Both the position numbers and the translations under genes were made by a program. From Botryllus schlosseri (Eukaryota), in the NCBI GenBank assembly GCA_051294905.1, contig CM119377.1:10664001-10728000 (forward strand): DNA of 64,000 nt, written 5' to 3'. Below are positions 1-64,000 of the stretch, piece by piece. The notes below the pieces were generated by a model, which saw nothing but the letters and a program-made list of their open reading frames with translations, was not told the DNA's origin and did no database searches. The stretch's first letter is position 1, and each line of letters starts with the position of its first letter.

Positions 1-703
1 CTTTTTTTTCAACTTGTATAATTATGCCAAATTGTGTAAATACTTTCCAAGGAGCATGCAGTATAAGCCTACGGACGATTTTCACCCGATATATCCGACG
101 GAGCCTATATATGATATGTAATGGTTAAGGTTAGAGCCCTGACGATGACCATCGACCGTGAAACGCCGCATAACGATGTAGTCCTGGTTAAAGACATTTT
201 CGGTCCGTATATGACAGGGGTAAGAAGCCTATACTTGGTTAAAGGAACTATATCACCCTATATGGTCAATTGTCAATGGCATTTCACTATGACGTCACAG
301 TTGAATATCCGTGACGTTAGGACTTGAAAAACATGTTTTAAACAAGGGCATTGTTTGAACCTGTTTGTTTCAAATTGATTTTTGTTTTAAATGCAACCCT
401 ATACGTGTAAAATTACAAATCAGGTTCCTGCTGGCTATGTGAATATGTTTTGATAATTCGTATACCACCGCCTTCCTCGAATGAGGGGCTTCCTTTAGAA
501 GAAATATTTCTTGGTAAAAATAAGTTTCGAGTATATATAGGCTACTTTTGTGTAGCCTATAGCCCGTACAGTACAATCTATTGACAAGTGTACAGTATCT
601 AGCAACAAGCATGGTAACTTCGTCCGTCTAGCTGTACTGAAAAGCCTTTAATTAAGAAAGGAATGTCGATTTGAACGTCCCTTTGCATGCCAGAGCGGCT
701 CAC

Positions 704-6503
<5,800 letters not shown>

Positions 6504-8772: not shown

Positions 8773-8991
8773 ATGAACCTCGCGGAAATAATTCAAGTTT
8801 TCAACACCTCTCTGAACGAAGAACAAATTTGGGCTGTCTGTTATCAATACGTAAAACGATTCATTGCCAACCGAACTGCTGAAGGCTACTCGAAAGGATA
8901 CGCCATCGCTACTGATCTGGAATCGGTATGCGTAAGCAAAGATGGGGAGATATCAGTGGTCGAGGAAAGGTTAGAGAGCTCCGACAGAAGG
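8773..8991 (+). CDS. SPIRE: Spire coding exon 1 (KIND N-terminus)
   Basis: MNLAEIIQVFNTSLNEEQIWAVCYQ...; donor GTAAGT, phase 0. Confidence 0.92.
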
Positions 8992-11900: not shown

Positions 11901-14900
11901 ATACAGAAAAGTATATTGTGACATTATGCAACTGTAATTTAGTAGATTAAAAGGGTGAAAACGCAGTCAACTCGAGAACAGCTAACCACCACATTCGAAA
12001 TCAGAATTAACGCAGATCTTGTCATAAAAAGCTTCAAGATCACTCTCATCTTATGATTGTAACTAACGTTAAATATCATTCATGAAAGTAATCAGACATG
12101 TGTAAGTAAACACGTCGCAACACGGTAGACGCAATATGAGCGTTAGGAATGACGATTCAAAATGTGCGTCTTCGTGATCGATGCATATTTAAAAAAATGC
12201 TTGATGCCGTTTACGTAAGGCTCAGCCGAGCATGGGGCTCGGCGAGTCATTGAATAATTAATATAGTCGTATGCTGTAAAGTCGTATTGAATGGTGCTGT
12301 TTCTCTATATGTTATATGCGAAGAGCACGAGATTTGGAAAACTGTATTGCAACTATATGTTTTTCTTCAACAAAATATAGCCTAACGATCATTGGCTACG
12401 TTTACTAAAGTCTAAAATCGTGGTGACGCAGTGTCAGTTGATGCAATTGTGTTTGGAGCAATTTTCTGATTCAGTTGCGCGTCAGAAATGAACGTCACTT
12501 CCAACACTGCAACATCTTAAAAAACCTGCTAGTGTTCGCCCGACATTTTGAACTCTACTGTAAAATCAATTTATATTACATTGTGCGCTGTACCGACGTG
12601 CCCCGCCGCAATACCTTCACATTCATGTGGTACTCGGGGAACTGGGGCGCTCTGTTTTTTCGGCATACGCTTAGGGTAGTGCGGGGCCTACGATAAGTTA
12701 AGTTATCGTAGGCCCCGGGTAGTGTGATATCATCTTTTGTAATGAAACATTTACCGTAGTGGCCCTCTGATAAAACCGTGTCGGAACTGCCTGTTGGGTT
12801 CGATATTCATAAATATGCAATCTTCATTTAAACGGGCCAATCTCCTGTACAGTTTCATCTCGTAACTAACCGCGATGCGAATCTTCTGATATCCACAATA
12901 TACCAGTTACCGGATACGGATTTAGTTAAAATTATACTAGCTTTAGGAAACTGTTGTCTTCTACCTTTTGCCCGATAACAGTAATTCCATATGATTGATT
13001 TGACTTTCAGATAACCCGACTCGATATCGTTAAATCTAACCCGTATTCGTGATTTGAGCTTCGAATCCGTAATTCGTTGCGTGTCGTGCGCAATGCACAT
13101 ATCCAATTCCAGCGAATCGAATCCGTTGAAAATTCGCATGATGGCATGAATATTCAGAGTCATCGCAAGTCTCTTCTCCAAATTTCAATCCGCCTTCGTC
13201 GAAGTCGTAATTCCAAACCTTTCGACCCAACCGAAATATTTAATAAATCGATGCGATTCGGTTCCGTGTCACGTGACGTGTCAAGCAAGACCCTAGGAAT
13301 TTGCAATCAATTAAACCGGAGTAAACGCGTTGCTCCCTGTCAGGTGTTTGAGATTTGGAATTATTTATGCCGGTGTTTCTTAACCGTAGGTCGTAGAGCC
13401 AGTCTCGTGGGTTCGGCGGAAGTCAAGACAGATTTGCTCTGAAGTGTAATATTGTTGATATGTCTCATGATCGTGTTTCACGGTTTTTGGCCATTAAACA
13501 CTGTTGTTGACGCACAGTTCATTTTGTGCACCAGTATGGAGTATTATATAGAAGTGTTTTAGATGTGCAATAGTGTAACATGGTAGATTTTCGTAACGCC
13601 GGAGGCTTGGAGACTAGCGCAACGGTTCGTCTGGTTAGCAAAGGGTAATAACCACCGCTTTATGTGCTTTCAGCTTATCGACGCGTTTGGAAGAGTACTT
13701 TTCGAGGCCTCGGACTACCGCACCGATCTGAACGATGAAAACGCGATCGGCCCGGACCTCGAGCGTCTCATCGAGAGAATGACCGTGGCCTACGACGGCA
13801 TTCTGACGGAAGAGGACGACGAGGGCTACGAGGACTACGAAGAGGAACACCACAGCCTCGATCACGGGCCGTGCACCTGGGAGATCTTAAAGAAGGTCTG
13901 TTTTTACGAGCTTTCTATTATTGATGATATCTGATTTCGCACCGTACTACCCGTTGATGTATGCAGCGCTCATATTGCATAAGCTTTTGTTAGAGTTAGA
14001 TTGATAGACAGAGCGCATTAGTTATGTTGATGTTGATCATTCCGCACAGCTGATGCATACCGTAAACAGTCCTGGGCTTCCTTGTTAGCGCTTTTTGCCG
14101 CTACATTTCCAATCCCTATTAACGCAGGGTGGGATTTCGAAGTCTATTGATTATTTCGAAGATTGTCTTCCTGCCGTTTTGCAGTGAAAAGGCAGGCGTA
14201 TGAGCGTAAATGATCTCTGTCTACCCGCACCTGCATATTGTGTGCGGCATTGAACTTGCAATTATGCGAGACAAGCCGACTTTTATTATACGAGAAACAA
14301 AGAGTGGCGTGTCGTTTCCAAACGCGGTCGATTTTGCATCGATCTTGTTGCGATCCGTTGCTGCACGAATATAATGGGATCTACGGTTTGATACCGATCA
14401 AGGAATACGCACAGGCTAAAACAGAGAACGTATAAAGTGACTTGATACAGCGAGCGACTTGAATCTGTGACGTAACAGAGAAAGATGTAACTCGCGAGAC
14501 TTAGATGTGTGACGACACAGTTGAATTTACGCTAGGCTTCATTTCGTCCGAGACGGTTTAGGCTTGTATGCATCCTGCAATGCAACGCTATCGATTTTAT
14601 ATTCAATATCGTCTTACTTTTTTAGAACTGTAGTTTGTGTGCTTCGTTTATGGTTTTGTAGACCCGCGTGTTTTTACGATTAGGAATGGTGTCAGTCGAT
14701 GAATTGCTAGCTATTCGGGAGAAAATCAGTCGGGAACGTTCCCGGGTGAACTTACGGCGTAGGCTCAAGCTTTTACAACTCACGGCCCCTGAGGAACACT
14801 TTCATCGAGGGTACAGTGTCCGCGTAACCGAAGTTACAGCGGCATGTCGGATGGTAGCCTACGGCGCGGCTTGGATCATGCTGCTTCTGTGTTTGTTTCT

Positions 14901-17900
14901 GGCTGTCGACGCCGTGGGTAGACTCGCGATCGCTTTTATTTTCGGCTTCGTCGTTGTTCTGGCGGTCAAGTTCGTGGATGACGTGCTGGATCAATTCAAC
15001 AAAATTCGGACTACTGTCGATATTCCTTTATTGAAAGTAAGGTGGTGTCTAACTTGACAGAGTGACCATAGAATTCAGAATGTTTAGATTCAATCGCGAG
15101 AAGCACAATGCACATGCGCTATTTATGTCGGCAGTCTTGATGCTGCGTACTAAAATTTTCCATGATAGATACGTAAAGCGGCAACTGTGCAAGGTTATGA
15201 TCAAGCCGTGAGGTTCTGAGCGACAAGTCATTCCTGTGATCTCAACTTTTGACTCGAGTCCGGTCCAGTCATTTTCATTTCTCCATTGAGTCAAGTCCAA
15301 GTCAATACAGAAGGCGGAGTAGTCCAAGTCATTGTGCGAGTCGTGGTGAACTGGTCATGCTGTGCGTATGTATGGAATTGTATTGAATTGTCATGCAGCA
15401 ATCATGAGATTATCGCTTAGCTATTTAATCAGAGATTAAAGGAGGATCAGAGGAAATTTTATGGGTAAATCCCATTCAAACGTTTGACTTGGTCGTAATG
15501 GCAAGTCGAGTCGCCAAAAAATTCAGACTCCAGTCACTACAACCCCCGGGACAGTACAAAAGACCCCTCCGCGAGAGATTGTGGATGCGCCCACACCCCA
15601 CATCGAAATACGCGTCAAGTGGCTACGCGGCTCTTGGTTGAAATATCGGACACTTTGTGAACGAATACGATGCTTGAATTTCCGAGTAAGTCTGATTTCC
15701 GAATTTTCGTTACAGCTGTGCGAAGAGCACTTGGATAAGCCTTCCAAGGCAAACGAACACTATCTCGCGGTATGCCGCGCGCTCATCACGGAAGCAGTCG
15801 ACCTGAAGTCGTTTCTGGAAAAAGTCTCCACTGCTGGAGAGGTGAGTGCGGATGCAAAAACATTTTTCGGTCTTCCGTTTCTGTGTGTTGGAAATTGGTA
15901 ATGCTATGTAAATTTGCCTTTTACCAATGCACTCTGGTTAGAATTCAGATTTTATAGTGATCGTAGTTTGATAATATACTGTGCAAGTTATGAATTCTAG
16001 TCCCTTTTTTATTTACTCGTTTATTTATTTATTTTTTATTCTGTGAAAATCACATTTTAACGAAAATTTAGTCATGGATCACTCACGCACAAAAAAGGCA
16101 GCTAAATCGAGAAATCATTTGTTCGTAATCTAGATTATAAACTTAACACGTTCAGCTTATATCAAGCTAGTTACTGCAGTAATCTTACCAACGAAATAGT
16201 CCCGGTCAGAATACAGCCTGTAAGGCACATCGTCCCGTTAGGTTTTCCATGATCAAGTTGTGCTGAAATGTAATTATTTCCACGAACGATAGCCGTGTAC
16301 TGTGTACTCGTACACGTCACTGCTCCAAGTGTCGTCAAGAATGTTGACAATCATAGAGCCCAACCTACCGAAATTAACGAAGCGACAACTCCTCCAATTA
16401 TATCACGCCGCACTACAAAAGCCCTGATTTAACGTCCGCTTCCTTAGTCTATTGTCGCACGCATTCCTTGCGGGCGATCCTGTCTTTTCGATATGTTACG
16501 GTGGTTGGACTTGAACTCATAAGTTGTAAGAGCAGAAACTATACGCTTTCACAAGACCGAAACGGTGGTGTTTGTAGTCGTTATGCGGAAGAGCCGTGTT
16601 TAGCGAGGATGCCCATTGCTCAACCAAATGGAAATGTCCTTAAAATTGTAGGCGTATTAACTGGAGTATTACGCGGCATAACTTTGAGTACTATTTCAGT
16701 CCACAATTAATCTGTTTTCATAACGCGTCTACTTCCATTCGTACCTTCAAAATCATCAAATACTGTTTTCGGACGATATTCATAATCATATGTCACATCG
16801 AGTCAAATATCTCGGCGACATTTTCTCCATTGTCTCGCGTAATTAGACCCGTGTTTTCGGCGGAATACGGCGTTAATCCGCGCCTTTGACACTCGAAAAT
16901 GCGACGATAGATATCCGCTGCGCGACTGACTCACGAAATGTAGCGTTTACGAATGCCGGTAATCGGTTCCTTAATCTCGCCGTCGTTGTATCACGGCGCT
17001 ATTTGATATTTTTCGCAGTTTGTTGTATACATATTTCGGTTTCGCGGCTCTGTCGATCTCGCTCAGGAAATATATGCTTACGACTGCATTTACTGGGTTT
17101 TTGTAGCCCGGCGTTGCTGTAATTTGTGCGCTTTACGGTCATTAACGTGTTCTAAGCGCCGTTGTAGTACTTTTTCCCTGCCACGATTGCTCTTGTGTTG
17201 CTCAAATATAGGTCATAATTTTGACATAATAAGGCACGTTTTGATAATCATAATAATGGAAATATTGAATTTAGTGGCATTTTCGTCGGCAAATCGCGAT
17301 TGTATTCTACATAAGTGAAGGTTCGCACGGTCCCGCTTACACTAGGGCTCTTCAAAAATGACTTTTTTCCTCAAATCGTACTGGCTACTTGATAAAATTG
17401 TTCGGTTACCTAATTTAAGCCTACAGACCAAATTTGGTTCAATTCCAACCAGTAGCCGCATTGCTACAGGAGAAAAAGTTTCTATTTATTATATAAAAAT
17501 AAATAACAAAAAATTTGAAAATTTTCTGCTCACCCCATGAAAGTGTTAGGTTGTCTATAGAAACGATGTTCACCAAATTTGGTTCAATTTCAAACAGTGG
17601 AAACGGAGTAATTGCTGTCGAAAAATTTGGATTATGAATAAAATAGTATTTACGGTGACCAAATCTTTAATTATTTATTTTAGTGGTGCTCACCGTAAAT
17701 ACTAATTTATTCAAATCCACATTTTTCGACGGAAATAACTCCGCTTCCACTGTTTGAAATTGAACAAATTTGGTGAACATCGTTTCTATAGACAACCTAA
17801 CACTTTCATGGGGTGAACAGAAAATTTTCAAATTTTCTGTTATTTATTTTTATAAACTAAATAGAAACTTTCTGCTCCTGTAGCAATGCGGCTACTGGTT

Positions 17901-23900: not shown

Positions 23901-26900
23901 CTTTATCGGCGTGCGTTAGTTCATGTGGAATAATGATTATTCGTGTAGGTGGAATAGTACTAGCTCGCAAGGTCTTACTGCGAAATGTGAAATTCTAAGT
24001 CAAGATTAAGTGATTAGAAGCAAGCCTCCATGTTCAGTATGCTGTTTCCTTTTCAGAGCTTGGAAAGCGTCGCTAATTTGAATAACAACAACGACACGGC
24101 AGACGGCAATAAAGAGGACTTTCCGGCCTTGAATTTCACGGAATGGGTAAGTGACAGATCTTTAACTAAATCAACTAGCGCACGCAGTAATGAAGTCCTA
24201 CTTTTTTGAAGTTGCCTACTGAAGTAGGTTTTGCTTAATTGCTTGATTACTTCTACTTCTACCTGTACATGAGTACTGTACTGACGCTGAACTACACCTT
24301 TGGTTGGTTATCTGTATACTTGACCTCGAATTCCCAATATCTTTCAGGCCCATCTCTGGATTCAAGTGGTGAGCGACCTGCGCGTGGGCGTTAAACTGAA
24401 GAAGCTGGAAGGTTGCGCGCGCAACCGCGAATTCGAGCTGACTCCGTACGAGATCCTGATGTCAGACATCAAGCAGAGGAATTACCGCTTGAAAAAGGTA
24501 AGCGGGTTCGCGCGATTGTATCCCCCGGGGCATTGGCCGTTCGATTTTTGACGCCGGATTTTGTTGCGCGCAGATCGCGGTGAACGGGGGGGCGCCTAGG
24601 AGGATCAGTCAGGATCCCCACGAGGTTATACTGGAATTTATAAGGTCGCGGCCCACCTTGAAACCGGTGAGTTTTTCAAGTGTCTGTGTTTCGATGTTGC
24701 CTTGCTGTGATTATAATATCGATAAAAGTATCCGACCCATCGAGCAACTTTACTTTTGAAACTATTTACGCGAGTATTTTCAGATCTTTATATCCTACTT
24801 GAAGTAGTTTTGACATGTCTTTGGGAATGCTACTTCTACATGCAATTAATTATGTATTTAAGACATTACTTCTACTTCAGGACCAATGCTTGACCACCTT
24901 GACCTCCTATGATAGATAGTTTTTGAAATCTGTGCGTTTAGGTGTCGTCTAGCTTTGTAGCCTAAAGATTAAAAGATTAAGTATCTCAAATCTCAATCGC
25001 GGATACTGTCTACAATGCAGCGTACGTGGTACGTTTGCAACTTCCTTGTTTTGCTGTGTTTGAAAACCCTGTTGAATTTTGTGTGTATTTTTGCTATGCT
25101 CTATCATTCATCAATCTGTTTTATCATACATCGCGTCAACGTGAGTTGCTTAAAGCCGCCATAAAATTCCTACACTGATTTCTGATACCTACAGAAGGTA
25201 CTCCATTGAGATTCTTTGTTATCATTCGGCCCTCTGGGGTTGTCTTACTATCATCATACTATGGTTGAACTTTTGCGCTATTGACATTATGACGTCAAAA
25301 TACGATTACGTACGTCATCATTTCTGAATATTTCCGCGACGCAACCGGGAAGTCGCTGTATATTTTATGGCTCGATCACACACAATCAAACATTCCAACG
25401 CGCGGTTTTGTTCTCACTCCAACCACAGCCACAGGGTGGCCACACTGAACAAAACAGTGAACAGGCTGCGCGAGTCCAGTAACCGCGCGAAAGTTTGTCT
25501 CCAGCGAAGCTTTCGGCTGACTATGCACAGGAATAGTTTGCAGAACTGGAATAATGTATGATTTCGAAGAGACGCTGATTTCATTGGTCAGGCAGCATGT
25601 GCATTTATATGACCAATCGACAAAGTCCTACAGGAAGTCTTCTCTTCGTGAATAGAGCTGGACAAGCATTGGCAAGGCCTTGAACATACCAGGTGAGAAA
25701 TGAAATATTGTCTACTGTTATGTCTATCTTATCTTTTAATTAATTGTCGTACAGCAGAAGAGGCTAAAGCTAAATGGGACTCTTTAAGGCAGAAGTACAT
25801 GAGGAATCGCCGTGATGGGAAGAGACTGAAGAAAAGTGGAGCAGGGGCAAGCTTTATCAGTGAGTGGCCCCTTCAGAAGCAGATGGCTTTCATCGAACCG
25901 TATGTGCAGTCAAGAACGTAAGTTTGGTTCGCATACCATACCATCTTCCTTTCTTCGAATTGTCCTTGTTTCATCTCATTTTCAATAAAACACGAAACTT
26001 CCATCTTCGCCGTTATATTTATTTAATTTATCGTTCATCAAATAACCTATGCCTATATGTTCATTATATCGCAATCAGTGTATTTATATTTGATGAAAAT
26101 GTTATCAAGGGGATGATTAGGCCGTATGATGAATAATATTACGAGTCTATGAAATCATTGACTACCGATTTTCTCGCACACATTACAAATTCACTTCTTT
26201 TTGCAGGACATCCAGTAACATGGATAAAACGATCATGATCGAGTTAGTACAGGAGGAACCCGTTTCTGCAGATTTAGATCCTGAAGCTGAAGCTATCGAG
26301 GCTCAATCAAATTCTACGGATCTGGAATCTACCGGGGACGTGTTGTTATCTCCTACACAAGAAAGCTATAGCTCTCCCTTGCCATCAGTCTCTTCAAAAA
26401 ACTCAAGCCGCCTATCAGTCTCTTCAAAAATATCAAGCCTATCTTCAACACAGAACACAAGCATGACTCCCGCGAGAAAGCGTACGGAGGTGCTAGACGA
26501 CTTTGATTCGCTTGTTCTCAAACACTTGAAACAAGATTCTGATGAACTCGACTACTTTGCCAGATTTATCACAGGATCAATGAAAATCATCGAAGAACCT
26601 AAGAGATCTGAAGTGATAGAAGAAATTACGCAGTGTATTTCGAAGGCGAAACGTAATGTTCTAACTGCACAACAAATCAATACATGTACTCAGTGAATTC
26701 AGCTGTAATGTTTTCATTGAACAACAAACCAATACATGTACTCAGTGAATTCAACATGTACTCAGTGAATTCAGTTTCAGTGAATGATTGGATGACTATT
26801 GAAATAGTCGGTGTAGGCATTTCGAACGTTTTTTGCAATAGTAGTGGAATTTCCAGTATAATGATCCATCGAACGATCCTCAGGAATGATATCATCCGTA

Positions 26901-29900
26901 GAAGATTCGGTATAGTTGGGCGTATGTTTGAGCAGAAAATTGTGGAGACAACAAATTGCCTTGACCATGTTATCCACATTTTCGACCTTTAGGGGGACAG
27001 GCTTTAGTAGAATCCGGAAACGTTGGACGAGGATGCCAAACGCATTCTCCACGACACGCCGTGCCCGAGATAGTCGTTTATTATAAACTTATCTCGGTTG
27101 GGCCAGGTATTTTCCAGGGTATGGTCTCATCAGGTGATATGATAGGGGGAAGGCTTCATCGCCAACAAATACATATGGCAACGGAGGCTTTCCTGGCTCA
27201 ACTTCCCGATCTGCAGGTAGCTGCAGTTCATTTGCAGCTAGTGCACGCCCAAATGGTGAATCGCGGAAAATTCCTCCATCCGAGGCGATATGATCCAGCG
27301 ATTGTTCTGAATGAGTCCCCATGCGCGAGAAATCTCAAAGTGACAGCCAATCTTTCCTCTACAGAAACAGCTTTCCTCCAGTTGGTATCGAGTTTGGCGA
27401 TATCTTCTCCAATCAGTTGGATTAGATAATGAAACTGCTGTGGTTTCATCCGAAAGTAGTCGAAATAATGCGCTTCTCTTTCTAATTCATATTCCTTGAC
27501 CAACCTGTGATATTCTCCTAGCTGTTCCCGCCGTTGTAAAATAGGATGCACCCAGATCGATCTGGCCTGCATCTTTTTTTTCAATCTTCTTCGAATGCAC
27601 AAAATTGCCAAGGCTTTCTTCTGATCAGGAGTTAATATCATACTGCAAGATATAAATACACTGCAAGGTATAAATACAGAGTCATTGATGTGATATGAAG
27701 ATACAGAGGTACCCGCAACTCTGCCCAAAGCAAATGTACCACAGCACACAGATTTGTACTAACTACTGGATTTGAAAAATGCGCAACTACCGGTATAGAA
27801 CTACTTAATTATCAAAATGGGTAGTTTGTTCAAATCAGACTAGTTATATTACACCAATCGCTATGCAACAACATCACCAAAAGCCTTCTGTCTTTCTTGT
27901 CTAGTACCACAATCGCCATTCACATGCATCGCTCACTGCCCTCGTACGATATGTCAGCACGACAACCACAGCAACAAAATAGGTACCATCGCCCTCTCGT
28001 CGCATCGTCATTCGGACGGAATCGCGCTCGCGATCATTAAGATAAAGATACAAAGAAATGCTCCGCCGCATCGATCGCTGTTGATCTGGTCGCATTGTGT
28101 GTGATCGACCCTTCACTGCCACGAATTTGGCTTGCCCAACGCACGATAGCTCACCCACACGTGTTCAAAATGTTCGGTGTATACAAAATAATCTATTTTT
28201 GGAGTAGGTTCATTTTACACGCATTTATGCCATCCTTTAGTGACATTGGACACCCAACGCGTAGTCGATGCGACAATATATCCGTCATTTTCATACGCGG
28301 CCGCGTACTTGGTCGCGGTATGTATGGTATTGCGTCATTGAAATTGTCAGCAGAATGTCACAATATTATTCGGTGTCAGTTTGCGTTCGATTTTGGGTTG
28401 AAATCGTGTTTATTTACAGCCGCGCCGAGTCCATTTGTAACGCAAAACACAAATTTAATGACTACTCAAATTTTAGTGATTGCTTTGTGCGCATTGCCAC
28501 GCCTTTTTCCGAAGCGATTATTGCTAGCGTTAACTATTTATGATATTCCAACCGGTAACGAGATAGTAATGCTTATTCTGGTTTAGATTAAAAATCGCAT
28601 ACTCGGGCCTCCGCCGCCTCGGTCCAAGTCGCTACACGAACTGTTGCTGGAACAGATCCAAGAGCCACCGTTGCCGTTACGTCACGTCCGCCCGCCGCCG
28701 GAATCGCCTTTGATGAAGAGAATCGACGACTGTCACGGCTTTATGACGTCGGCGCGGTCTTACGACGATATGCTGAGTGAGTAGAATCGCCAATGTTTTC
28801 CGCTAATTTTTTGCATCGTGTTGTTGGATTTGGCCATTTGGGCTTTAGTTAAAGATTTTGGTATCCTGTATTTTTGTGGGGTTAAATCGGTGCCGGCATT
28901 TTCTCGAGTAATCCGGCAAGGAATTTTGCGACGCTTGACTTTTGAGAGTGCCAGACCGAGTAATTCGGGATTTCGGATAAGCAGTGGTGATAACTGCTTT
29001 ACCCCTGGACATAATGGCGTCTGCCGCAGTCTCGAGCGCTTCGCCAACTGTATTTCACTTTATTCACAATTGCGAAATTTGAGAGCTTGAAGGCTTGTCC
29101 CTCAATTACGAAATAAAACGCCTGATTTTGAACAGATTTAGAAAATTAGAAGTCTTCCTGATATATTTACGACTTGTACGCGGCTGCTTCGCAATGCTGT
29201 GAGTGTTGTGAGAAACCTTTTGAAATAAGCATACAATTCGTTTGGGACCAGTAATATGTGGAAGCATGGCCTACTAGGCCATGGTGGAAGCTAAATCGAC
29301 TTTTTTAAACGACATTTTATCGATATTGACAGTAGAACAGGCAGCGAAGTCGCATGCCATTGAAAAGAAACCAAACAGCAATCGAGTTGGTGGCTTCTAC
29401 GGGACTCTCTGCCTTGCAGAATAATAGGTTTACTATCAAAAAGACTCCAACAAATTTCTCACTGCAATAAACTTTCAATGACGAAATTTTACCGGACCGC
29501 ACGCTAAAAAGGCTAAGAACCAGTTATCCACAGCCCTGATGCTGTAAACCAGTGTTTTTAGGCCCAAATCGGGATGAAATTACTGTTGTGGCCGGTCTTA
29601 CATGGGCAGGCTCACACCTCTGTACCGGAAAGTAATGTCACACATAAAATAGCGTAATGCAGGCGGATATTTCTTATTAGTCCTTCCATTACAGCTGTTT
29701 TAACTGCGTTTCCTATTTAAACATCCGCGCTGCTGTGGTGTCGCAGGCGTAATTGGAAATTAACAGTTTCCGATTGTAAGAAACGCGGCGCTGATTGCAG
29801 ATATAGCAGCTCCGTTTTGTGACGACGCCAATTTGCCGGATTACTGCGCGATCCGCTTCACCTGCGAGCTTATAATTACCGGTTTTATGACGTAAGAAAC

Positions 29901-32900: not shown

Positions 32901-35900
32901 ACGTCACTTGGTCAATTCGTCAAATTGAATTCGGCAGTCCGCGCTCGGTTTGTAAGTAATAATGTATTCGGATTAGGGTTGGGTTACGGTTAGAGGTTAG
33001 CTCAGGAGTTCAGTGCCAAATTTAACATGCCAAATTCACCAGGTGCCAAAATCACTGGTAATCATTTTGCCGATTACCAGAGAACCCGGCCCTTGGAGAA
33101 CCCGGCCCTACCAACTCGGCCCTCGGTCAACCCGGCCCTTGGAGAACCCGGCCCTCGGAGAACCCGGCCCTCGGGAAATTTTGTATATCAAGCACGCGTG
33201 GTCTACTTGTGGTATTCATGGTGTTTTTCGACTACTCTGGACCTCGGTGAATGCGGCCCTCGAATAATTATGCATTAAATGTGATATGATTCTCAGGTAG
33301 GGAACAATCACGTGCCGTGGTAGATCTCCCAGTGCGAGAGCCTGATATCGAAGAATCTACCACGCATGCTACCGGTTCACCATGATTGGTTGCCAGGGAA
33401 CTCGGCACTTGGAGTTTGATGCCGCAGCTTTGCAGCATGTGGCCTAATATCCCACCCCGGCAACCCTAATATCCCACCTCCGGCAACCCTAATATCCCAC
33501 CTCCGGCAACCCTAATATCCCACCCCTGGCAACCCTAATATCCCACCCCGGTAACCCTAATATCCCACCCCGTGAACCCTAATATCCCACCTCCGGTAAC
33601 CCTAATGTCCCACCCCCCGAACCCGAGGAATTCACCGAGGGCCGGGTTCCCCAAGGGCCGAGTTGGTAGGGCCGGGTTCTCCAAGGGCCGGGTTCTCCGG
33701 CAACCATTTTGCCTGCTATGTCATTTCATGTTAGATTCGGTTGCCAGACATATGAGCATGCGACACAATGGAAAACGACAGTTGAGCATGGGACACTTAG
33801 CGTGCGTCACTTAGCGTGTGACTTTATAGCCCCAAAACTAACCCTAACCGAAACTTAACCCTGAAATTAACTGCTATATATATATTAACCCCAAGCCTTA
33901 CCCTAACTCCAACCCCAACACGTAATTTAACCCATATGCTCATGTGTCGCATGTTATAATGTCGCATGCTCGTGCTCATATGTCCATGGACCAGTAGATT
34001 CACTTATTCACATACCTGTTTTGCGTGAAATGCTATACCCCGACCAAATCCACATTTTGAAACTAACTTGAGTAATTTTGAGTTCTTTTATTTATCGCTT
34101 CAACTTGAAGTAGTTTTGACACGACTTGGATATCGCTACTTGTACTGTAATTTAGCGACGTTGCTTGTACGTCTACGTAATTAGTAATGGCGCCACCTCT
34201 GGATTCGGGATGATATTGTAATTTGTTGCAACTGAGGACGGGCCGTTGTCAGTGCGCTTGCTGTAATCAACCTGTGCAAAAGCACTTCCAAATACGGCGA
34301 CCTGAAAGGTTCCGTGTATTCTCAGGAACGTCTGGCGTGTCGTCGGGTGGCGCGGACGAAAATGATCCGTCCAATGCGAAAAACAAGTCGTTTCACAGAA
34401 ATACGTCGACTGTGCGTCAGAAAAAAGGTACGCGCCGAAATGTCATTTGTTTTCGAGCCTCCAAAAACAGAGGTGGTAATTACCGAAGCACTTATACTAT
34501 TTCCGAGTGCTCAAGCACGTTTTGCCTGGTAGCGCTTCTTTTGGTTATGATTTTCTACTACTTCCACTTCTATCTGAACAAGTTTTAGCAAAACTACTCA
34601 CTCTTTACAGTTTAGATATGGTGAAAAGTAGATCGTAGTTTGGGGATTTCAGAGTAGGGGACATCGTCTATAACTTTAGGGATATATCTACTAATCTTCT
34701 GCCTTTTTGCAGTGTAGTCAGTCGTTTTGCATGAGACGCCAAGATACATGTTGCAATTTCGCTTCAAAAATTCATGTGGTATTGATGGCGCACTGCGCTG
34801 TCACATGATGTAGGCCTCTATGCATTTTGATGGATGTAACAGTGTCTTGTCTCTAAATTTACTGTCATCTTTCTTTTGATAATTCCTCTCTCTTCATTCT
34901 CTTACTCGTATTCACCCTTCATCGGGTCTTAGTAGGTGTATTTGGCCCGCGGGCCTTATAATGCCCAGGTCTGAGGTCGGATTCGAGTTTTGGTTTGGGT
35001 AAGGGTAAATTTTGGAGTTAGTTAAAGTGTTATTTATTCACATTCTCGTGTCTCGCGTTCAAATGTCAGACTCTTTGATTTTCCATGAACCCGCGTCATT
35101 TCCCTTTCAGTTCTTCCAGTCGAAATGCCAGACTACTCAGCGTCGGGTGAGACCCGATACCGCAAATTCTCCTCACGTACCGGCGGTGTGAAGCGCGCTC
35201 ACACCTTCTCGGCCAAGTCTACCGAACAAGAAAACCCGCTGTGTGCGGTGCGGCCTACTTGGAGAGAGTTGCGGGCTAAGGCTGCTAAGAAAGCGGCGAT
35301 GGCATTTGAAGACAGCGATGAAGTATTACCTCTGCCGCCACGAGCGTTGGTGGCGTCACCGCTACGGAAGATACATGAAGACAGGGGATGGACGCAGATT
35401 CAGAAACGGCCTGATGACTATCCTCGAGGACAGGTATACTGTCAGTTTAAAGATAATGACTTGTGACTTTTTCGCCAACCGGTTCGTGGGCCTGTTGCGA
35501 ATATCTGTTTCCGTATCACTTGGGTTGGGCGCTATCGAGCGCCCGAGTCATTCTGTTCTGAATCGAGTGTGAGGCTTTGAGACGAGTCTAATATTTGACA
35601 TGGGTGGTCAAAATACTTATCGTTGGTACTCAAGTAGAATTTATAGTAGCAAATTCTGAGTGTGTGAAAAAGTAACTATTCTAGGCCCAGTAGAAATAGT
35701 CCAACATTGTAAGTAACCACTTGAGCTAGTAGTGCGAGTCGCTAGTGAAGTAGAAGTAACATCATAAATTTCTCAATTGCTCAATTACAAGCAAAAGTAG
35801 CGATTTTCCAAGACGTGCTAAAACTACTTCAATTAGTAGAAATGATTTGTCTGAAAAGTATGCAAGTAGTTTTTAAAAGTGGTTTAGTATTAAATTGGTA

Positions 35901-37790
35901 GTGGCCTTATTGCGATATTGCAAGATGAATTGTCACGATAACAAAAAAATCTGTGATTGATTGTTTACACCTTTTTTCCATCAATTCCTACTCTCTGCCG
36001 ATTGACGTCGCGATGTGCGTAATATGTGTACATCTCGTATCTCGAAGTTCGTGCAATAGCTGTGAAGAGCTGTTTGATATGCAAGCCTAAGTGGGGGCAC
36101 ATTTGCAAAAGTAGCCGTTATTTATCCGCACCTCAACTTTGCTGTACAGTAAACACTGCGGTATGTACGAATCTAAACCCATATGCAGATTCCCAGGAAC
36201 CGTAATATATATTTCATCAACTCCGCTAATGAGTAACATGTGAAATCTGCTCTACAGGGATTTTTAAGTCGCGAAAGAGTGCAGTATGTCAGTATCACCA
36301 CTGACGAATTGATCACAATACGCAAAAAGCTCGTCGCTCACGATCTGGAACAATATCAAGACAGGGGGCAGCTGTACTCTTTACTAAAGAAAGGAAAGGT
36401 AACATCATCTTCCTTCTAACAGTCCCTGGCATCGTTTTGATATTGTGAAAACCTTTTCATATGAAAGTTAACCTCTTTATTTTACAGATATGTTTCAACT
36501 GTCGCGTGAGAGAATTCAATATCTTTTGGTGGGCAAGAAATTGTCAAATCTGTGAACAGAAGATATGCTCCAAATGCATGCGTAAGGTAATTGCGTTTAC
36601 TAATACCAGCACTGGTCATCAAAATGAACAAAAAAATTCATTAGCAGAACTTTTAGGAGCCATTACTGGGGTTTTCAAAGTTGCTGATTACGATCACTTT
36701 ACTTCCGCCATATTGACTCTAGTTTAGAAGATACTTATACCTCAAGAAAAGCCCAAAATTGCTGTATTCACCCTTGGATATATCATTTGATAGGAAGTAA
36801 ATCGTAGCTTTTTCAACACATTCAGAATCGGTGCCTTTTAGAACCCCCTAAACCACTCTTACTTTGTTTGCCTAAATATGTGTGTTGGTGTAATCTGTAA
36901 AATATCAATAGCTGGTGTAATCTGTAAAATATCAATAGCTGCCCTGACTTACAATGTCTTCTGGTATTAGGTCGAAACGCCGTTCGGCAAGAATCTCGAG
37001 GCGAATGTACAAGATTTAAAACCGACGCTAGCGACGGAATCGTACGGCTACAAGCAATCACATTCAGCGCAACAAAGTAGCTCATCAAGGTAATGATCAG
37101 TCACTCTCTGGCTTTGAAGATTCGGTTAATATTTTAATGATGCGAGCATGATAAAGTGTCCTCATCTGAATTTTCTTAGGCCAAATCCCCAATCCAGTCA
37201 AAAAATTTCATTGCATGCTCAATGCCAGTTGAAAATTTGTGCGAAGTTGTCACAATTTTTTCACTGTGCACGAGTACAGAATTGTGCATGACTCGACTCG
37301 TTATATATGACTTACTGTAGTCTCGTATATCAGGAACGATAGTTGAACCTTATGACTTGGGAAGGATTGCAAATAGTCAAAACCTCCTAGAGTATTGGGA
37401 AAAAGTAAACTACTGACCACTTCCGGCAATGACACCGTTCCTAATCACCTTTGCAGGTCATTTGGTATGTCCTTGTCGGCACTGCTGGACCGAGGCAACG
37501 GTCAACAGACAGGCTCGCCGAAAAGACCACCCACATCAGACTCACAAAAGTTGCGCAAAATGGACGTATGCGAAGCTTGCCAAACGCTGGTTGTCCGCGT
37601 GTTGGCGTCTAACGAATCGCAAACTAACGCCAACCACTTGCCCGGCGGGGACTGTCTCAAACGGTCCTCCTCCAGCGTAGGCGGATTGCACCGCCCCACG
37701 AAAACACTGGCCCGATCGAGCACCAGCGTGGGCACTTCAGGTATGCAAGGGTTGCGGGCCCTAAGTAAGTACCGCCCGATAGAAACGTAG
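8773..37790 (+). CDS. SPIRE: Protein spire homolog (actin nucleator), 15 coding exons: 8773-8991, 13674-13895, 15716-15841, 24057-24146, 24348-24497, 24574-24666, 28587-28776, 30277-30362, 31842-31989, 34326-34427, 35111-35433, 36258-36398, 36488-36586, 36971-37089, 37457-37790; about 813 aa
   Basis: KIND (LNEEQIWAVCYQ; DEGYE; HYLAVCRAL), four WH2 repeats (DLRVGVKLKKL, DIKQRNYRLKKI, EFIRSRPTLKPI, EQIQEPPLPLRHV), Spir-box-like RKLDAP, DELITIRKKL..LKKGK, modified FYVE CFNC/CQIC/CSKC/CEAC. All phases close into one 2442-nt frame. A very short extra exon in intron 1 cannot be excluded. Confidence 0.93.
12682..12717. mobile_element. 36-bp palindromic micro-insertion with 7-bp TSD
   Basis: CGGGGCCTACGATAA-GTTAAG-TTATCGTAGGCCCCG flanked by GGTAGTG on both sides. 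Confidence 0.8.
13674..13895 (+). CDS. SPIRE: Spire coding exon 2 (KIND)
   Basis: LIDAFGRVLFEASDY...LERLIERMT...DEGYE...WEILKK; phase 0-0. Confidence 0.92.
14662..15036 (+). CDS. Candidate alternative Spire exon (or alternative first exon, ATG 14686) encoding a two-segment hydrophobic region
   Basis: Stop-free 125 codons, acceptor TTTGTAG at 14661 and donor GTAAGG at 15037, both phase 0; codon style similar to the Spire exons. Confidence 0.55.
15716..15841 (+). CDS. SPIRE: Spire coding exon 3 (KIND C-terminus)
   Basis: LCEEHLDKPSKANEHYLAVCRALITEAVDLKSFLEKVSTAGE. Confidence 0.93.
17343..18004. mobile_element. 662-bp near-perfect palindromic hAT-type MITE in Spire intron 3
   Basis: TAGGGCTCTTCAAAAATGAC...GTCATTTTTGAAGAGCCCTA; perfect 8-bp TSD GCTTACAC; older partial relatives at about 31290-31530 and 58915-59115. 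Confidence 0.93.
24057..24666 (+). CDS. SPIRE: Spire coding exons 4-6 (24057-24146, 24348-24497, 24574-24666): linker and WH2-A/B/C
   Basis: ...LNFTEW/AHLWIQVVSDLRVGVKLKKL...LTPYEILMSDIKQRNYRLKK/IAVNGG...HEVILEFIRSRPTLKP. Confidence 0.95.
25554..26696 (+). pseudogene. Harbinger MADF/Myb-SANT DNA-binding protein gene with BESS-like C-terminus; 3 exons (25554-25692, 25755-25917, 26207-26696); premature TAG at 25653-25655
   Basis: MYDFEETLISLVRQHVHLYDQSTKSYRKSSLRE*SWTSIGKALNIP/AEEAKAKWDSLRQKY...SGAGA...W..QKQMAFIEPYVQSRT/TSSN...DELDYFARFITGSMK; GT-AG introns in phase. Confidence 0.88.
26777..27641 (-). pseudogene. Harbinger (HARBI1-like, DDE_Tnp_4) transposase pseudogene with internal deletion/frameshift and a nonsense codon
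   Basis: WVHPIL..R...GEYHRL, FDYFRM, VSVEERLAVTLRFLAHGDS | SDGGIF, YVFVGDEAFPL, PYPG, * (27089-27091), YNKRLSRARRVVENAFGILVQRFRIL, ICCLHNF. Confidence 0.93.
28587..28776 (+). CDS. SPIRE: Spire coding exon 7 (WH2-D)
   Basis: IKNRILGPPPPRSKSLHELLLEQIQEPPLPLRHV...; donor GTGAGT, phase 1. Confidence 0.9.
29265..29283. mobile_element. 19-bp palindromic micro-insertion with 7-bp TSD
   Basis: GTGGAAG-CATGGCCTA-C-TAGGCCATG-GTGGAAG. Confidence 0.72.
30277..30362 (+). CDS. SPIRE: Spire coding exon 8 (Spir-box-like)
   Basis: TRRTKRKLDAPPYAAQFGVAVSSTDFDE; phase 1-0. Confidence 0.8.
31842..31989 (+). CDS. SPIRE: Spire coding exon 9 (Ser/Asp-rich)
   Basis: SDTDSEDTSDSDSSFMLGSSTPESP...; phase 0-1. Confidence 0.8.
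32139..32172. mobile_element. 34-bp (17+17) palindromic micro-insertion with 7-bp TSD
   Basis: TATGTAG-CGGGGCCTACGATATTT-AAATATCATAGGCCCCG-TATGTAG (one arm mismatch). Confidence 0.8.
32926..33080 (+). mobile_element. Short Helentron/HINE-like element
   Basis: Sub-terminal inverted repeats TGAATTCGGCA (32926-32936) / TGCCAAATTCA (33028-33038), internal GGTTAG-like repeats, terminal stem-loop CTGGTAATC-8nt-GATTACCAG. Confidence 0.55.
33080..33697. mobile_element. MITE-like element with modular TIRs (GAGAACCCGGCCCT units) and internal minisatellite
   Basis: GAGAACCCGGCCCTTGGAGAACCCGGCCCTACCAACTCGGCCCT is mirrored at 33638-33697; no TSD recognised. Confidence 0.75.
33443..33622 (+). repeat. Minisatellite, 8 x 22-23 bp (CCTAATATCCCACC[T]CCGGCAAC)
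   Basis: Eight units counted directly. Confidence 0.95.
33698..33982 (-). mobile_element. Second Helentron/HINE-like element, opposite orientation
   Basis: Inverted CATATGAGCATGCGAC (33749-33764) / GTCGCATGCTCGTGCTCATATG (33961-33982) enclosing TAACCC-like repeats; similar architecture also at about 60-240. Confidence 0.5.
34326..34427 (+). CDS. SPIRE: Spire coding exon 10 (symmetric phase 1-1, possibly skippable)
   Basis: TTCTCAG/GAACG...AAAAAAG/GTACGC; GTSGVSSGGADENDPSNAKNKSFHRNTSTVRQKK. Confidence 0.65.
35111..35433 (+). CDS. SPIRE: Spire coding exon 11
   Basis: Inside ORF 35125-35466; phase 1-0; donor CAG/GTATAC. Confidence 0.75.
36258..37790 (+). CDS. SPIRE: Spire coding exons 12-15 (36258-36398, 36488-36586, 36971-37089, 37457-37790): modified FYVE and C-terminus
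   Basis: DELITIRKKLVAHDLEQY...LKKGK/ICFNCRVREFNIFWWARNCQICEQKICSKCMRK/.../...MDVCEACQTLVVRVL...stop 37790. Confidence 0.9.
36886..36939 (+). repeat. Perfect 27-bp tandem duplication in Spire intron 13
   Basis: TGGTGTAATCTGTAAAATATCAATAGC x2. Confidence 0.95.
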
Positions 37791-48300: not shown

Positions 48301-49884
48301 AATTCGAAATTGAAAAAGCTCAACAATAGAGGTGGTTAGTAACGAAGTAATGCGATCAGATTTTGCTTGTCACTTTGATTGTATAGGATTATAGACTGTG
48401 ACTTCAGTTTTTACATTTTGCTTGCTACTTTAATTGTTATGATTTTAGATTGTGACCTCAGTTTTCCCATTTTGCGTGAGTTAGCACTACTGTATGATAC
48501 ATCATGCTATATCAAAAACTAGAAACCAGTGCAATTTGATACTCCCGTGGGGCATGTAGAAACATGGATTAATTGATATCTACAATATATTAGATATGGT
48601 CATGAAGCAACTTGTGGTTTTGCCTACCATGGAAACACTATACTGCTCGTACTGACATATAATCATGTGTTCAGAAATGAAGGCCCTTGTTATGTCTACT
48701 TGCAGTATATAAGTGCTGCACCGTTAGAATACCTAAATTTCTACTTCGGCACCTTGAGAAATCAATCCATTTACTTTCAGCAATAGATTTCGTATACTAG
48801 AAAGTGGCACGGGAATCGATTTGCACCCGAATTTGAGCTGCGTTTTCACGTTAGTCAGGATGACATAAACCAGTGCGGTCTCAAACTCGAATGTGCTCGC
48901 GGGCCAATTTCCTAGTTCTTGATGGGGCCTCGGGCCGCAGCATCACTTTTTAAGGGCATTCAATGTCTAATTTCCAAATAGGCCTTATTTGACGGGTCAC
49001 TGGTCGTTGCAGACCGGCATTTCACGAACATCGTGAAAATGTAATTTACATTCGTACTATTCACGCTTGGCACGGAAGAAATCACGTTTTCAAATATTTT
49101 AAAAGCAATGTTTTTGTGCTGGGCATAATTTGTCAAAATAATGAGTTATAAACACCGTGCGAGAGGACAAATGCAAAATTGCAGCCTAAAAGCTGACGCG
49201 TTATAATTTTGCAACCAGCGGATTCCGTGGTCGAGTGTTCTTTTACGAATCACACCCCAGACAGTGATAATGAAAACACTGATGGTGTGGTTCTACACCC
49301 GTTGCGATCTTACTCCGTTTACAGGTGTGTTCCCGCAATTTATCACCCGACATTTAAGGTGAAATTGCAAAAATTTACACCCACAACGTGTATCGGCTGC
49401 AAATCCACCCCCTCACATGGTTGAGTGGGGTGTGAGGCTACACTTATTCCGTTTACAGTGTATCTGTATACTTTCGTAATTGCAAGGTGTAGGCTAGATT
49501 ATCGTGACTGACGCGAAATGACAAACTACAATTACGTATGATCTTCGAAAATATGTTCGGTTACCATGATACTGACCATTACAGAGATAGGTTATTTCAC
49601 GCGTTTCAATCTCGCCCATAAAACCGATCCCAAAACTATACTTTCTATAATTTGCAAAATCCAAATTTTAAAAGCGAGTAGTTTTGTCTGAAAACTGTTC
49701 AAGGACAGAAGCGGAAGGAGTGTGAAAATATATTCCCGGAGTCAGTAGGGCAAATACTACGTGATTACTCCGAAAAAGCAGATTTCGTTACCGACCACCT
49801 CTGCGTCAGTCGCCACCACGGACGCTACGGTGCTCACATGTCTCTTGTTGGGCGTAATATGTAATCTCACTGATTGTGTTTCAG

Positions 49885-63100: not shown

Positions 63101-63629
63101 ACTTTTACTACTTAAGTAATTATGTTTTAGACTACTTCGCACTTCTACTTCAGCAGTTCTCAGGCAAATATACTTGCTGTTACTCTATAAGGATTTTGGG
63201 ATATTTTATGAAGGAAATGGTCATAGCAAGTGTGCGAAAATTCACCATTTGTAGTGTCTTTCGTCATTTTGTGTTAGTCGCAAAGATGCACACTGTAATT
63301 CCGGAAGTAGCCGCCTCTGATTACCTGCAATACTTAATGCTAAATATCTACCTTTAAAACGTTTTGAGTACAATATTGATGTCTTTGTACAGTGGCGGGA
63401 ATTCTCACTGCGGACTTTGCTTCTGGGCTGGTACATTGGGCGGCGGACACTTGGGGTTCCGTCAGCATTCCTATAGTAGGCCGGGCCTTTATCCGCCCGT
63501 TTAGAGAGCACCACATTGATCCCACCGGCATCACAAGGCACGATTGGGTGGAGGCTAACGGAGATAACTGCATGTTAACGGTTATTCCATTAGCTATCAT
63601 GGCAAGGAACTTTCTCATGTTACCTGAAG
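57153..63629 (+). CDS. PEDS1: Plasmanylethanolamine desaturase PEDS1 (TMEM189/Kua); coding exons 57153-57294, 62563-62682, 63393-63629; continues beyond the window
   Basis: ...[11 protein letters not shown]/(Q)[12 protein letters not shown].../[60 protein letters not shown]; His-box motifs of the TMEM189 family; all junctions phase 1. Confidence 0.95.
59531..60294. mobile_element. 764-bp hAT-Charlie/Buster-type MITE nested in the foldback spacer
   Basis: CAGGGGTGTGAAAC...GTTTGACACCCCTG; perfect 8-bp TSD CACTAGAG, resembling the NTCTAGAN target preference of Charlie/Buster elements. Confidence 0.93.
60585..60860 (+). repeat. 82-bp higher-order repeat (two alternating 41-bp monomers with GATATCTGCGCA core) in the foldback right arm
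   Basis: TCTGCGCACT recurs at 60601, 60683 and 60765; the array resumes at 62010-62345; inverse array at 58215-58640. Confidence 0.92.
60950..62008. mobile_element. Chimeric deletion derivative of the 1227-3816 hAT foldback family, nested in the foldback right arm
   Basis: TAGGGTTGTCCAAAATTTGG...CCAAATTTTGGACAACCCTA; TSD CTGCGCAC/CCGCGCAC (7 of 8); 159 bp of left arm + 354 bp of the AGAGGT family + about 545 bp of right arm. Confidence 0.9.
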
Positions 63630-64000
63630 GTAGGTGACTTCGAATTCCATTTACGTAGGTAGGTTAGTGCTTCTTTATATTGTAATGCCGTATTGGAATT
63701 GTGGATTGTTCGAATACTAGTAATGTCTCCCGATTCATTATGGAATTAGCGATTGTGGCCAGTATAATCGTATAAATCATGTCAAATGTGTAATATAAGT
63801 AATCAATGGGACTGCTTTGAACTGAGGCTTGTGCCTCCGCGTTATGTAGATATAAGCATATGCATGTACAACGGTATTTTATGATACATATTTTCAGTGA
63901 GTGATGCATCATATATCACGTTCTAGTACCTTTCTAGTGTTATTCATACTGGCTCTATTTAACATGTCGGGGGAAATCTTGCCTGTCATTTCCCTGCTTG

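What the first reader, a model, noticed from the sequence alone, without database searches (positions are those of the whole stretch)
14662..15036. Candidate membrane-anchoring alternative exon of Spire (KIND-less, two-helix N-terminus)
Seen: a 125-codon stop-free block in intron 2 with phase-0 acceptor and phase-0 GTAAGG donor, in frame with exon 3. It reads MVSVDELLAIREKI...MVAYGAAWIMLLLCLFLAV-DAVGR-LAIAFIFGFVVVLAVKF...DIPLLK, then LCEEHL; the normal junction is WEILKK|LCEEHL. Established: Spire uses KIND to bind FMN/Cappuccino formins and reaches membranes through its FYVE domain and Rab/MyoV; mammalian Spire1C gains a transmembrane exon elsewhere in the protein for mitochondrial targeting. 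Inference: an independently evolved integral-membrane Spire isoform (alternative first exon from ATG 14686, or cassette) that keeps all four WH2 repeats but loses or breaks KIND, giving formin-independent actin nucleation on an organelle.
Basis: partly seen in the sequence, partly recalled or inferred. Interest (0 to 1): 0.8.

Follow-up and report, generated by a model that had tools for sequence, protein, structure and literature searches.

The report
Unproven membrane-hairpin ORF in Spire intron
An open reading frame with exon-like borders that would encode two membrane-spanning helices really does sit inside an intron of the actin-nucleator gene Spire and is odder than chance easily gives. 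It has no relative anywhere and no evidence of use, so it cannot yet be called a Spire exon.

Summary
Window 14662-15036 (+) is 125 stop-free codons with TAG|A on the 5' side and AAA|GTAAGG on the 3' side. It is in phase with Spire exon 2 (..WEILKK, ends 13895) and exon 3 (LCEEHL.., starts 15716), and it encodes a charged helix plus two strongly hydrophobic helices.

ORF length alone is ordinary: the window has 16 stop-free blocks of at least 125 codons. The combination is not ordinary. It is the only exon-like block of at least 80 codons in the window. Its hydrophobic part is the most hydrophobic and most A-poor stretch of all 64 kb. Its codon and amino-acid make-up rank in the top 2% of non-coding ORFs.

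Against a real exon:
- No homologue among 1.84 billion protein representatives, and no Pfam family.
- No ORF like it in the one close relative whose ORFs for Spire exon 2 and the neighbouring Rost gene are in the same collection.
- Synonymous codon usage is not significant.
- No RNA data could be reached.

The question is unresolved. My estimates:
- About 45%: fortuitous or very young ORF in a T-rich, A-poor intron patch.
- About 30%: genuine lineage-restricted Spire exon.
- About 15%: separate nested gene.

As a cassette it would sit in the variable loop of KIND and need not break that domain. It is unrelated to mammalian ExonC. Another intron ORF with two membrane helices was flagged elsewhere in this genome.

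The parts
14662..15036 (+). Candidate exon: 125 stop-free codons, phase 0 at both ends
14659..14661 (+). TAG that both opens the stop-free block and supplies the candidate acceptor AG. Preceded by tgcttcgtttatggttttg
14686..14688 (+). In-frame ATG (codon 9 of the block) with G at -3 and G at +4. Possible start of an alternative first exon or of a nested gene
14695..14781 (+). Charged, Arg-rich predicted helix (residues 4-32 counted from the ATG)
   Evidence: AF2 single sequence, pLDDT 70-77; Arg is 19% of the first 63 residues
14851..14976 (+). Two hydrophobic helices (MVAYGAAWIMLLLCLFLAV, loop DAVGR, LAIAFIFGFVVVLAVKFV). Most hydrophobic and most A-poor stretch of the window
15037..15042 (+). 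Candidate donor GTAAGG, phase 0, six codons before the stop
15055..15057 (+). TGA that ends the ORF if the donor is not used (123-aa product from ATG 14686)
8773..8991 (+). Spire exon 1 (KIND profile 1-63), donor AGG|GTAAGT
13674..13895 (+). Spire exon 2 (KIND profile 75-144), acceptor tgctttcag|C, weak donor AAG|GTCTGT. About 95% identical in a relative's ORF (P0003)
15716..15841 (+). Spire exon 3 (KIND profile 163-197; human Spire1 KIND chain residues 185-220 of 3R7G)
36258..36398 (+). Spir-box exon (..ITTDELITIRKKLVAHDLE..LLKKGK), followed by the FYVE-type exon 36488-36586

Best explanation
The block is most likely an unconserved intron ORF. It would be a fortuitous or evolutionarily very young reading frame created by a T-rich, extremely A-poor patch of Spire intron 2. 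A-poor DNA has few stop codons, and with T at the second codon position it reads as Leu, Val, Phe and Ile. On this reading it is not an established Spire exon. The canonical mRNA joins 13895 to 15716, and the block is removed with the intron or is included only as splicing noise. Shown here: the ORF, its borders, its composition, and the absence of any relative. Inferred: that it is not used.
For: No homologue: the word-indexed search found none. phmmer against 1.84 billion representatives gave one hit at E 8.6e-4, which BLASTP does not reproduce. No Pfam family passes threshold, and metagenome scans were empty. The same collection does hold genomic ORFs of a close relative (Logan run SRR25569784) for Spire exon 2 (P0003, exon part about 95% identical) and for the Rost exon (P0002, 81%), but nothing like this block. 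Any annotated cassette isoform would be the longest Spire product and so a likely cluster representative, and none was hit. ORFs of this length are common here: 16 blocks of at least 125 codons. The acceptor's phase follows from the TAG that opens the block. The coding-like signal comes almost only from the hydrophobic part. The N-terminal 60 codons score near zero, the C-terminal part scores negative, and synonymous-codon usage is not significant (p 0.18). The N-terminal third is 19% Arg, which is typical of translated non-coding DNA. The sense strand of the whole gene is T-rich.
Against: The coincidence is large. It is the only exon-like block of at least 80 codons on either strand, against 0.02 per window expected for at least 120 codons. 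Its hydrophobic 43-mer scores 2.13, against 1.65 for the next in the window and 1.55 for a genuine Rost membrane exon. The tail extrapolates to about 0.013 per window, or 0.27 on the conservative log-linear fit. Only frame 0 of the A-poor patch is hydrophobic. Codon log-odds and three-base periodicity are reached jointly by at most 0.2% of simulated blocks. They rank third among about 85 unexplained blocks, behind the block's own antisense frame and a block antisense to a probable Spire exon. Amino-acid composition beats 98.5% of non-coding ORFs. GC is 0.50 against 0.43-0.44 in the flanking intron. The language-model recognition score is 1996, closer to a real Rost exon (2317) than to a chance ORF (1097). 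The relative's contig with exon 2 ends about 475 bp after the exon, short of where the block would lie, so non-conservation is not demonstrated.
Confidence: 0.45

Rival explanations
1. It is a genuine, lineage-restricted alternative coding exon of Spire. Version one is a cassette (13895-14662 and 15036-15716). It would insert a helix plus membrane hairpin into the variable loop of KIND and tether a full-length, KIND-containing Spire to a membrane. Version two is an alternative 5' exon translated from ATG 14686. It would give a hairpin-anchored Spire that lacks KIND positions 1-144 but keeps the WH2 motifs, Spir-box and FYVE. If the genome is a sea squirt, as earlier notes say, an internal transcript would leave the AG at 14661 without an upstream donor. 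Such an unpaired acceptor receives the spliced leader, which would put the ATG 24 nt from the 5' end. Both ends of a hairpin face the cytosol, so the actin-nucleating part would be exposed there.
For: One hypothesis explains the in-phase acceptor, the in-phase consensus donor six codons before the stop, the length of 375 nt (a multiple of three) and the well-placed ATG. It also fits the coding-like composition and periodicity, the extreme frame-specific hydrophobicity and the raised GC. The upstream exon 2 donor, GTCTGT, is weak, as often seen next to alternative exons. There is a functional precedent: mouse Spire1C is anchored to the mitochondrial outer membrane by an alternative exon (PMC4574297). 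Spliced-leader addition only at unpaired acceptors is documented in Ciona (PMC1488885). A similar 'hidden first exon' claim in this genome was reported as conserved by another follow-up (unchecked).
Against: There is no expression evidence. There is no homologue in any Spire or any other protein, and no counterpart among the relative's called ORFs. The non-hydrophobic parts show little coding signal. A 125-codon lineage-specific in-frame exon is rare in itself. AGs lie 23 and 35 nt upstream of the acceptor, which constrains branch-point choice. Four short upstream ORFs lie between a TATA-like site at 14432 and the ATG.
Confidence: 0.3
2. It is an independent small gene nested in Spire intron 2. 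It would encode a 123-residue orphan membrane-hairpin protein (ATG 14686 to TGA 15055-57) from its own transcript, possibly spliced-leader trans-spliced at AG 14661, and would not be joined to Spire exons.
For: It has a complete ORF with a good start context and its own stop. It shows coding-like composition and hydrophobic helices. An ATTAAA lies about 380 nt downstream, near 15436. The nearest language-model neighbours are small hypothetical membrane proteins of 123-127 aa, though at a score of only 0.86.
Against: The in-phase GTAAGG just before the stop would then be a 2-5% coincidence by my estimate. There is no homologue and no called gene on record. No promoter evidence could be obtained.
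Confidence: 0.15
3. It is a decaying fragment of a transposon-borne or duplicated gene that landed in the intron.
For: Periodic composition and raised GC could be left over from past coding. The gene already hosts a Harbinger-type transposase remnant at 26.8-27.1 kb.
Against: There is no second copy in the window. There are no terminal repeats or target-site duplications around it and no tandem repeat. There is no Pfam hit in any frame on either strand and no protein relative at all. The frame is intact over 131 codons.
Confidence: 0.07

Closest known systems
Mammalian Spire1C / mitoSPIRE1 alternative exon 'ExonC' (Manor et al. 2015, PMC4574297)
   Same: It is an optional exon of a Spire gene that encodes hydrophobic helices. 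It is proposed to embed as a transmembrane or hairpin anchor with the actin-nucleating part facing the cytosol.
   Different: ExonC is 58 residues and lies after KIND and the WH2 repeats, just before the Spir-box. It is conserved from chicken to human and shown experimentally to target mitochondria. The block here is 125 residues and lies inside the KIND-coding region. It has no sequence similarity to ExonC, no known relative and no expression evidence.
Alternative 5' ends made by spliced-leader trans-splicing at unpaired acceptors in ascidians (Satou et al. 2006, PMC1488885)
   Same: An AG acceptor lies a short distance (24 nt) upstream of an ATG, inside a larger transcription unit.
   Different: No spliced-leader read, no internal promoter and no proof of the organism were obtained here. 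The ascidian identity rests on earlier unchecked notes.
Membrane-helix-encoding ORFs that arise de novo from thymine-rich non-coding DNA
   Same: A T-rich, A-poor non-genic stretch reads as transmembrane helices and has no homologues.
   Different: Those cases are free-standing yeast ORFs with measured fitness effects. This one sits in phase inside an animal gene's intron, and nothing is known about its expression.

Membership tests
Coding exon of the Spire gene | Reading frame compatible with flanking exons (phase and length) | tested here: met
   Exon 2 ends and exon 3 starts in phase 0. The block is 375 nt and stop-free.
Coding exon of the Spire gene | Plausible splice signals at both ends | tested here: met
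   ggttttgTAG|A and AAA|GTAAGG compare well with the gene's real sites. It is the only such block of at least 80 codons in the window.
Coding exon of the Spire gene | Spliced into mRNA (junction reads or cDNA) | not testable with these tools
   No transcript data for this species could be reached. ORF-level products of this genome are not in the protein collection.
Coding exon of the Spire gene | Conserved as an open frame at the same position in related species | tested here: inconclusive
   Nothing similar exists among 15 billion predicted proteins, although a relative's ORFs for exon 2 and Rost are present. The relative's exon 2 contig stops about 475 bp downstream, and its DNA could not be fetched.
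Coding exon of the Spire gene | Codon usage and composition of coding sequence | tested here: inconclusive
   Full codon log-odds, periodicity and amino-acid composition are in the top 0.2-2% of null ORFs. Synonymous usage is not significant, and the signal is confined to the hydrophobic part.
Spire1C ExonC-type mitochondrial anchor | Position between the WH2 repeats and the Spir-box | tested here: not met
   The block lies between KIND profile positions 144 and 163, about 9.4 kb upstream of the first WH2 motif. ExonC lies C-terminal to the WH2 repeats.
Spire1C ExonC-type mitochondrial anchor | Sequence similarity to ExonC | tested here: not met
   BLASTP finds no alignment at E up to 100.
Spire1C ExonC-type mitochondrial anchor | Hydrophobic helix or helices able to embed in a membrane | tested here: met
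   Two segments have 19-residue Kyte-Doolittle means of 2.4-2.5. AF2 predicts helix with pLDDT 87-98, though as one long helix rather than a hairpin.
Transposable-element or repeat-derived sequence | Other copies, terminal repeats, or a transposon protein domain | tested here: not met
   Only the 64-kb window could be searched for copies.

The most novel reading that the evidence does not exclude
A sea-squirt-lineage Spire gene has independently acquired an exon encoding a membrane hairpin inside the KIND-coding region. Used as a cassette or as a (possibly trans-spliced) first exon, it would make an integral-membrane actin nucleator. That would be a convergent counterpart of vertebrate mitochondrial Spire1C, built at a different place in the protein.
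Probability: 0.28. Interest if true: 0.65.

Novelty: not a real feature. Interest (0 to 1): 0.3.

Why it matters
If the exon is real, it would be a second, independent case of an actin nucleator of the Spire family being hard-wired to a membrane. It would show that organelle-anchored Spire isoforms are a recurrent solution. It would also give a natural test of whether KIND tolerates a large loop insertion, or can be dispensed with. If it is not real, it is a useful caution. T-rich, A-poor intron patches can imitate membrane-protein exons very convincingly, down to in-phase splice-like borders. Such calls therefore need RNA or cross-species support before they are believed.

Tried and rejected
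1. Resemblance of the N-terminus (VSVDELLAIREKI) to the gene's own Spir-box (ITTDELITIRKKL). The pairwise E was 0.003, but in a blastp of the block against all 1341 stop-free pieces of the window it was only the second hit, at E 3.9. DNA identity was about 63% over 30 nt. I rejected it as noise.

2. The single phmmer hit, P0001. It is a 2474-aa protein with unrelated Pfam domains, and BLASTP does not reproduce the match. I rejected it.

3. Antisense coding. The minus-strand block 14776-15027 shares the periodicity but has no Pfam hit and is only 84 codons. I did not pursue it.

4. Degenerate triplet repeat as the source of the periodicity. TRF finds nothing at score 30.

5. RNA gene or SINE. 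No Rfam or tRNA match.

6. Fetching orthologous intron DNA. The relative's Logan contigs are about 1.7 kb and their DNA is not retrievable. Metagenome scans with exon 2 and with the block found nothing. Full-length Spire proteins could not be reached, because spliced proteins have no reference and single exons fall outside the length window of the indexed search.

7. Literature. The Spire evolution paper (PMC11231147) mentions no transmembrane or alternative exons in invertebrate Spire.

8. The bacterial-type promoter and terminator scan is not meaningful for this eukaryotic locus.

9. The AF2 model was not used for a fold search, because two helices would match anything.
Full report
**What is there**

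It is the first 125 codons of a 131-codon stop-free block, 14662-15054, closed by TGA at 15055-57.

The block is opened by the stop codon TAG at 14659-61. The proposed acceptor AG is the last two bases of that stop, so its phase 0 is automatic. The tract upstream (tgcttcgtttatggttttg) is pyrimidine-rich.

The donor AAA|GTAAGG at 15037 is in phase 0, six codons before the stop. ATG 14686 has G at -3 and +4.

**The host gene**

The host gene is Spire. Three exons match the Pfam KIND domain PF16474:
- Exon 1, 8773-8991: profile positions 1-63.
- Exon 2, 13674-13895: profile positions 75-144.
- Exon 3, 15716-15841: profile positions 163-197.

Exons 2 and 3 also align to the solved human Spire1 KIND domain, at chain residues 104-162 and 185-220 of 3R7G. 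All these junctions are phase 0.

Downstream lie three WH2-like motifs (24.4-24.7 kb and 28.6 kb). The Spir-box exon is 36258-36398 and a FYVE-type exon is 36488-36586. The normal junction WEILKK|LCEEHL is therefore right, and the block is in frame both as a cassette and as a first exon.

**Is it more than chance?**

Length alone is not. The window has 16 stop-free blocks of at least 125 codons, and this one is the 13th longest. The combination of features is unusual.

- *Exon-like borders.* I required a YAG acceptor with at least 8 of 12 pyrimidines, an in-phase GTRAG donor and at least 80 stop-free codons. This is the only such block on either strand. Second-order Markov copies of the window give 0.175 per window for at least 80 codons and 0.02 for at least 120.
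- *Hydrophobicity.* The hydrophobic part (residues 64-106) has a 43-residue Kyte-Doolittle mean of 2.13. That is the highest of all stop-free 43-mers in six frames. The next non-coding one scores 1.65, and a genuine Rost membrane exon in the window scores 1.55. Extrapolating the empirical tail gives between 0.013 (curved fit, which the data favour) and 0.27 (log-linear fit) such segments per window.
- *A-poor patch.* The same stretch is the most A-poor 130 nt of the window (9% A). Only frame 0 reads as hydrophobic; the other two frames score 0.3 and -0.7.
- *Codon use and periodicity.* Codon log-odds (+0.11 per codon) and three-base periodicity fall in the range of true exons. Among about 85 unexplained blocks, only the block's own antisense frame and a block antisense to a probable Spire exon score higher. 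At most 0.2% of simulated long ORFs reach both values.
- *Amino-acid composition.* It is more protein-like than 98.5% of non-coding ORFs.
- *GC content.* 0.50, against 0.43-0.44 in the flanking intron.

Their thresholds were also chosen after seeing it.

**What weakens the coding case**

- The signal comes almost entirely from the hydrophobic part. The first 60 codons score near zero and the last 17 score negative. The choice among synonymous codons is not significant (p = 0.18).
- The N-terminal third is 19% Arg, as translated non-coding DNA tends to be.
- The sense strand of the whole gene is T-rich.
- An A-poor patch is both stop-poor and, with T at codon position 2, hydrophobic.

**Relatives**

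No relative was found by any route:
- The indexed search of 5.8 billion proteins found nothing.
- phmmer against 1.84 billion cluster representatives gave one hit at E 8.6e-4, to a 2474-residue protein with unrelated domains. BLASTP does not reproduce it.
- Pfam gave only sub-threshold noise.
- There is no similarity to mouse ExonC.
- Metagenome scans were empty.

This genome's own ORFs and annotated proteins appear not to be in the collection. The lack of an annotated isoform therefore means little.

The collection does hold genomic ORFs from one close relative, Logan run SRR25569784. One spans Spire exon 2 (P0003). Its exon part is about 95% identical, while the flanking intron translation is unrecognisable. 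Another spans the neighbouring Rost exon (P0002, 81% identical). Two of two real exons tested have a counterpart there, and the candidate has none.

That counts against conservation, but only mildly. The relative's exon 2 contig ends about 475 bp after the exon, while the block lies 767 bp downstream in this genome. The contig's DNA could not be fetched.

**Other origins**

- No second copy in the window.
- No terminal repeats or target duplications around the block.
- No tandem repeat.
- No Rfam or tRNA match.
- No Pfam hit for neighbouring or antisense ORFs.

The N-terminal resemblance to the gene's own Spir-box falls to noise in a window-wide comparison.

**What the protein would look like**

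AlphaFold2 without an alignment gives mean pLDDT 80. It predicts a helix at residues 4-32 and a long helix at 39-111, with pLDDT 87-98 over the hydrophobic part. It does not bend the chain at DAVGR, and such confidence is usual for hydrophobic helices.

The language-model recognition score is 1996. A chance ORF from the window scores 1097 and the real Rost exon scores 2317, so the candidate lies in between.

**Consequences if the exon is real**

A hairpin puts both ends on the same side of the membrane, so the rest of Spire would face the cytosol.

As a cassette, the insert falls after the acidic stretch of exon 2 and before the last 35 KIND residues. In that region the KIND profile and the human structure do not align to this gene. 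KIND need not be destroyed, and formin independence does not follow.

As a first exon from ATG 14686, the protein would lose KIND positions 1-144.

Earlier notes of this scan call the genome a sea squirt (unchecked). In Ciona, the spliced leader is added at acceptors that lack an upstream donor (PMC1488885). An internal transcript could then be trans-spliced at AG 14661, leaving 24 nt before the ATG. That would explain the acceptor and the ATG together, but it is inference only.

**Comparison with what is known**

Mammalian Spire1C is anchored to the mitochondrial outer membrane by the 58-residue ExonC. ExonC lies after KIND and the WH2 repeats and just before the Spir-box, and it is conserved from chicken to human (PMC4574297). 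The block here would work in a similar way. It fails the tests of position and sequence, so it is not a member of that exon family. A survey of Spire evolution mentions no such exon in invertebrates (PMC11231147).

**Verdict**

I weighed the intrinsic signals against the lack of any relative, the weak signal outside the hydrophobic part, and the large number of windows and features screened. My estimates:
- About 45%: a fortuitous or very young intron ORF.
- About 30%: a genuine lineage-restricted Spire exon.
- About 15%: an independent nested gene.
- About 7%: a decaying inserted fragment.

A single RNA-seq alignment would settle it.

Noticed in passing
window 599-5298 (-): A beta-tubulin gene runs off the window start on the minus strand, head-to-head with Spire. 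Pfam Tubulin matches at E 1e-35 for 4897-5298. The sequence is somewhat divergent, for example [18 protein letters not shown].
   Followed up: partly
window 26133-27758: A Harbinger/PIF-type transposon remnant lies inside a Spire intron. DDE_Tnp_4 matches at E 1e-11 on the minus strand (26780-27088). There are further open blocks (27231-27758 minus, 26133-26693 plus) with strong three-base periodicity but no Pfam hit.
   Followed up: partly
window 49858-52384 (+): A Rolling-stone (Rost, PF21534) family membrane-protein gene lies downstream of Spire. Its large exon is 81% identical to an ORF from Logan run SRR25569784 (P0002).
   Followed up: partly
window 63380-63640 (+): An exon of a PEDS1/TMEM189-type lipid desaturase (Pfam Lipid_desat, E 6e-28) lies at the window end.
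   Followed up: partly
window 58137-58650, 60358-60985, 61929-62441: Arrays of a 41-bp tandem repeat occur in three places, partly in inverted orientation to each other (arms up to 329 nt, 85% complementary). Near-identical 130-400-nt segments are shared between 1.2-3.8 kb and 60.9-62.0 kb.
   Followed up: no
window 33443-33624: A 22-23-bp tandem repeat (CCTAATATCCCACCYCCGGCAAC) coincides with the highest GC and strongest negative GC skew of the Spire region.
   Followed up: no
window 12442-12693 (+): An 84-codon stop-free block in Spire intron 1 has strong three-base periodicity (0.22 per codon) but neutral codon score and no Pfam hit. It is unexplained.
   Followed up: partly
whole window: CpG observed/expected is about 1.1 overall, with no depletion in the gene body. 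This suggests little germline methylation of this locus.
   Followed up: no
window 14432-14476: A TATAAAG at 14432 and a CRE-like TGACGTAA at 14469 lie about 210-250 nt upstream of ATG 14686. Four short upstream ORFs lie between them and the ATG. Their significance is unknown.
   Followed up: no
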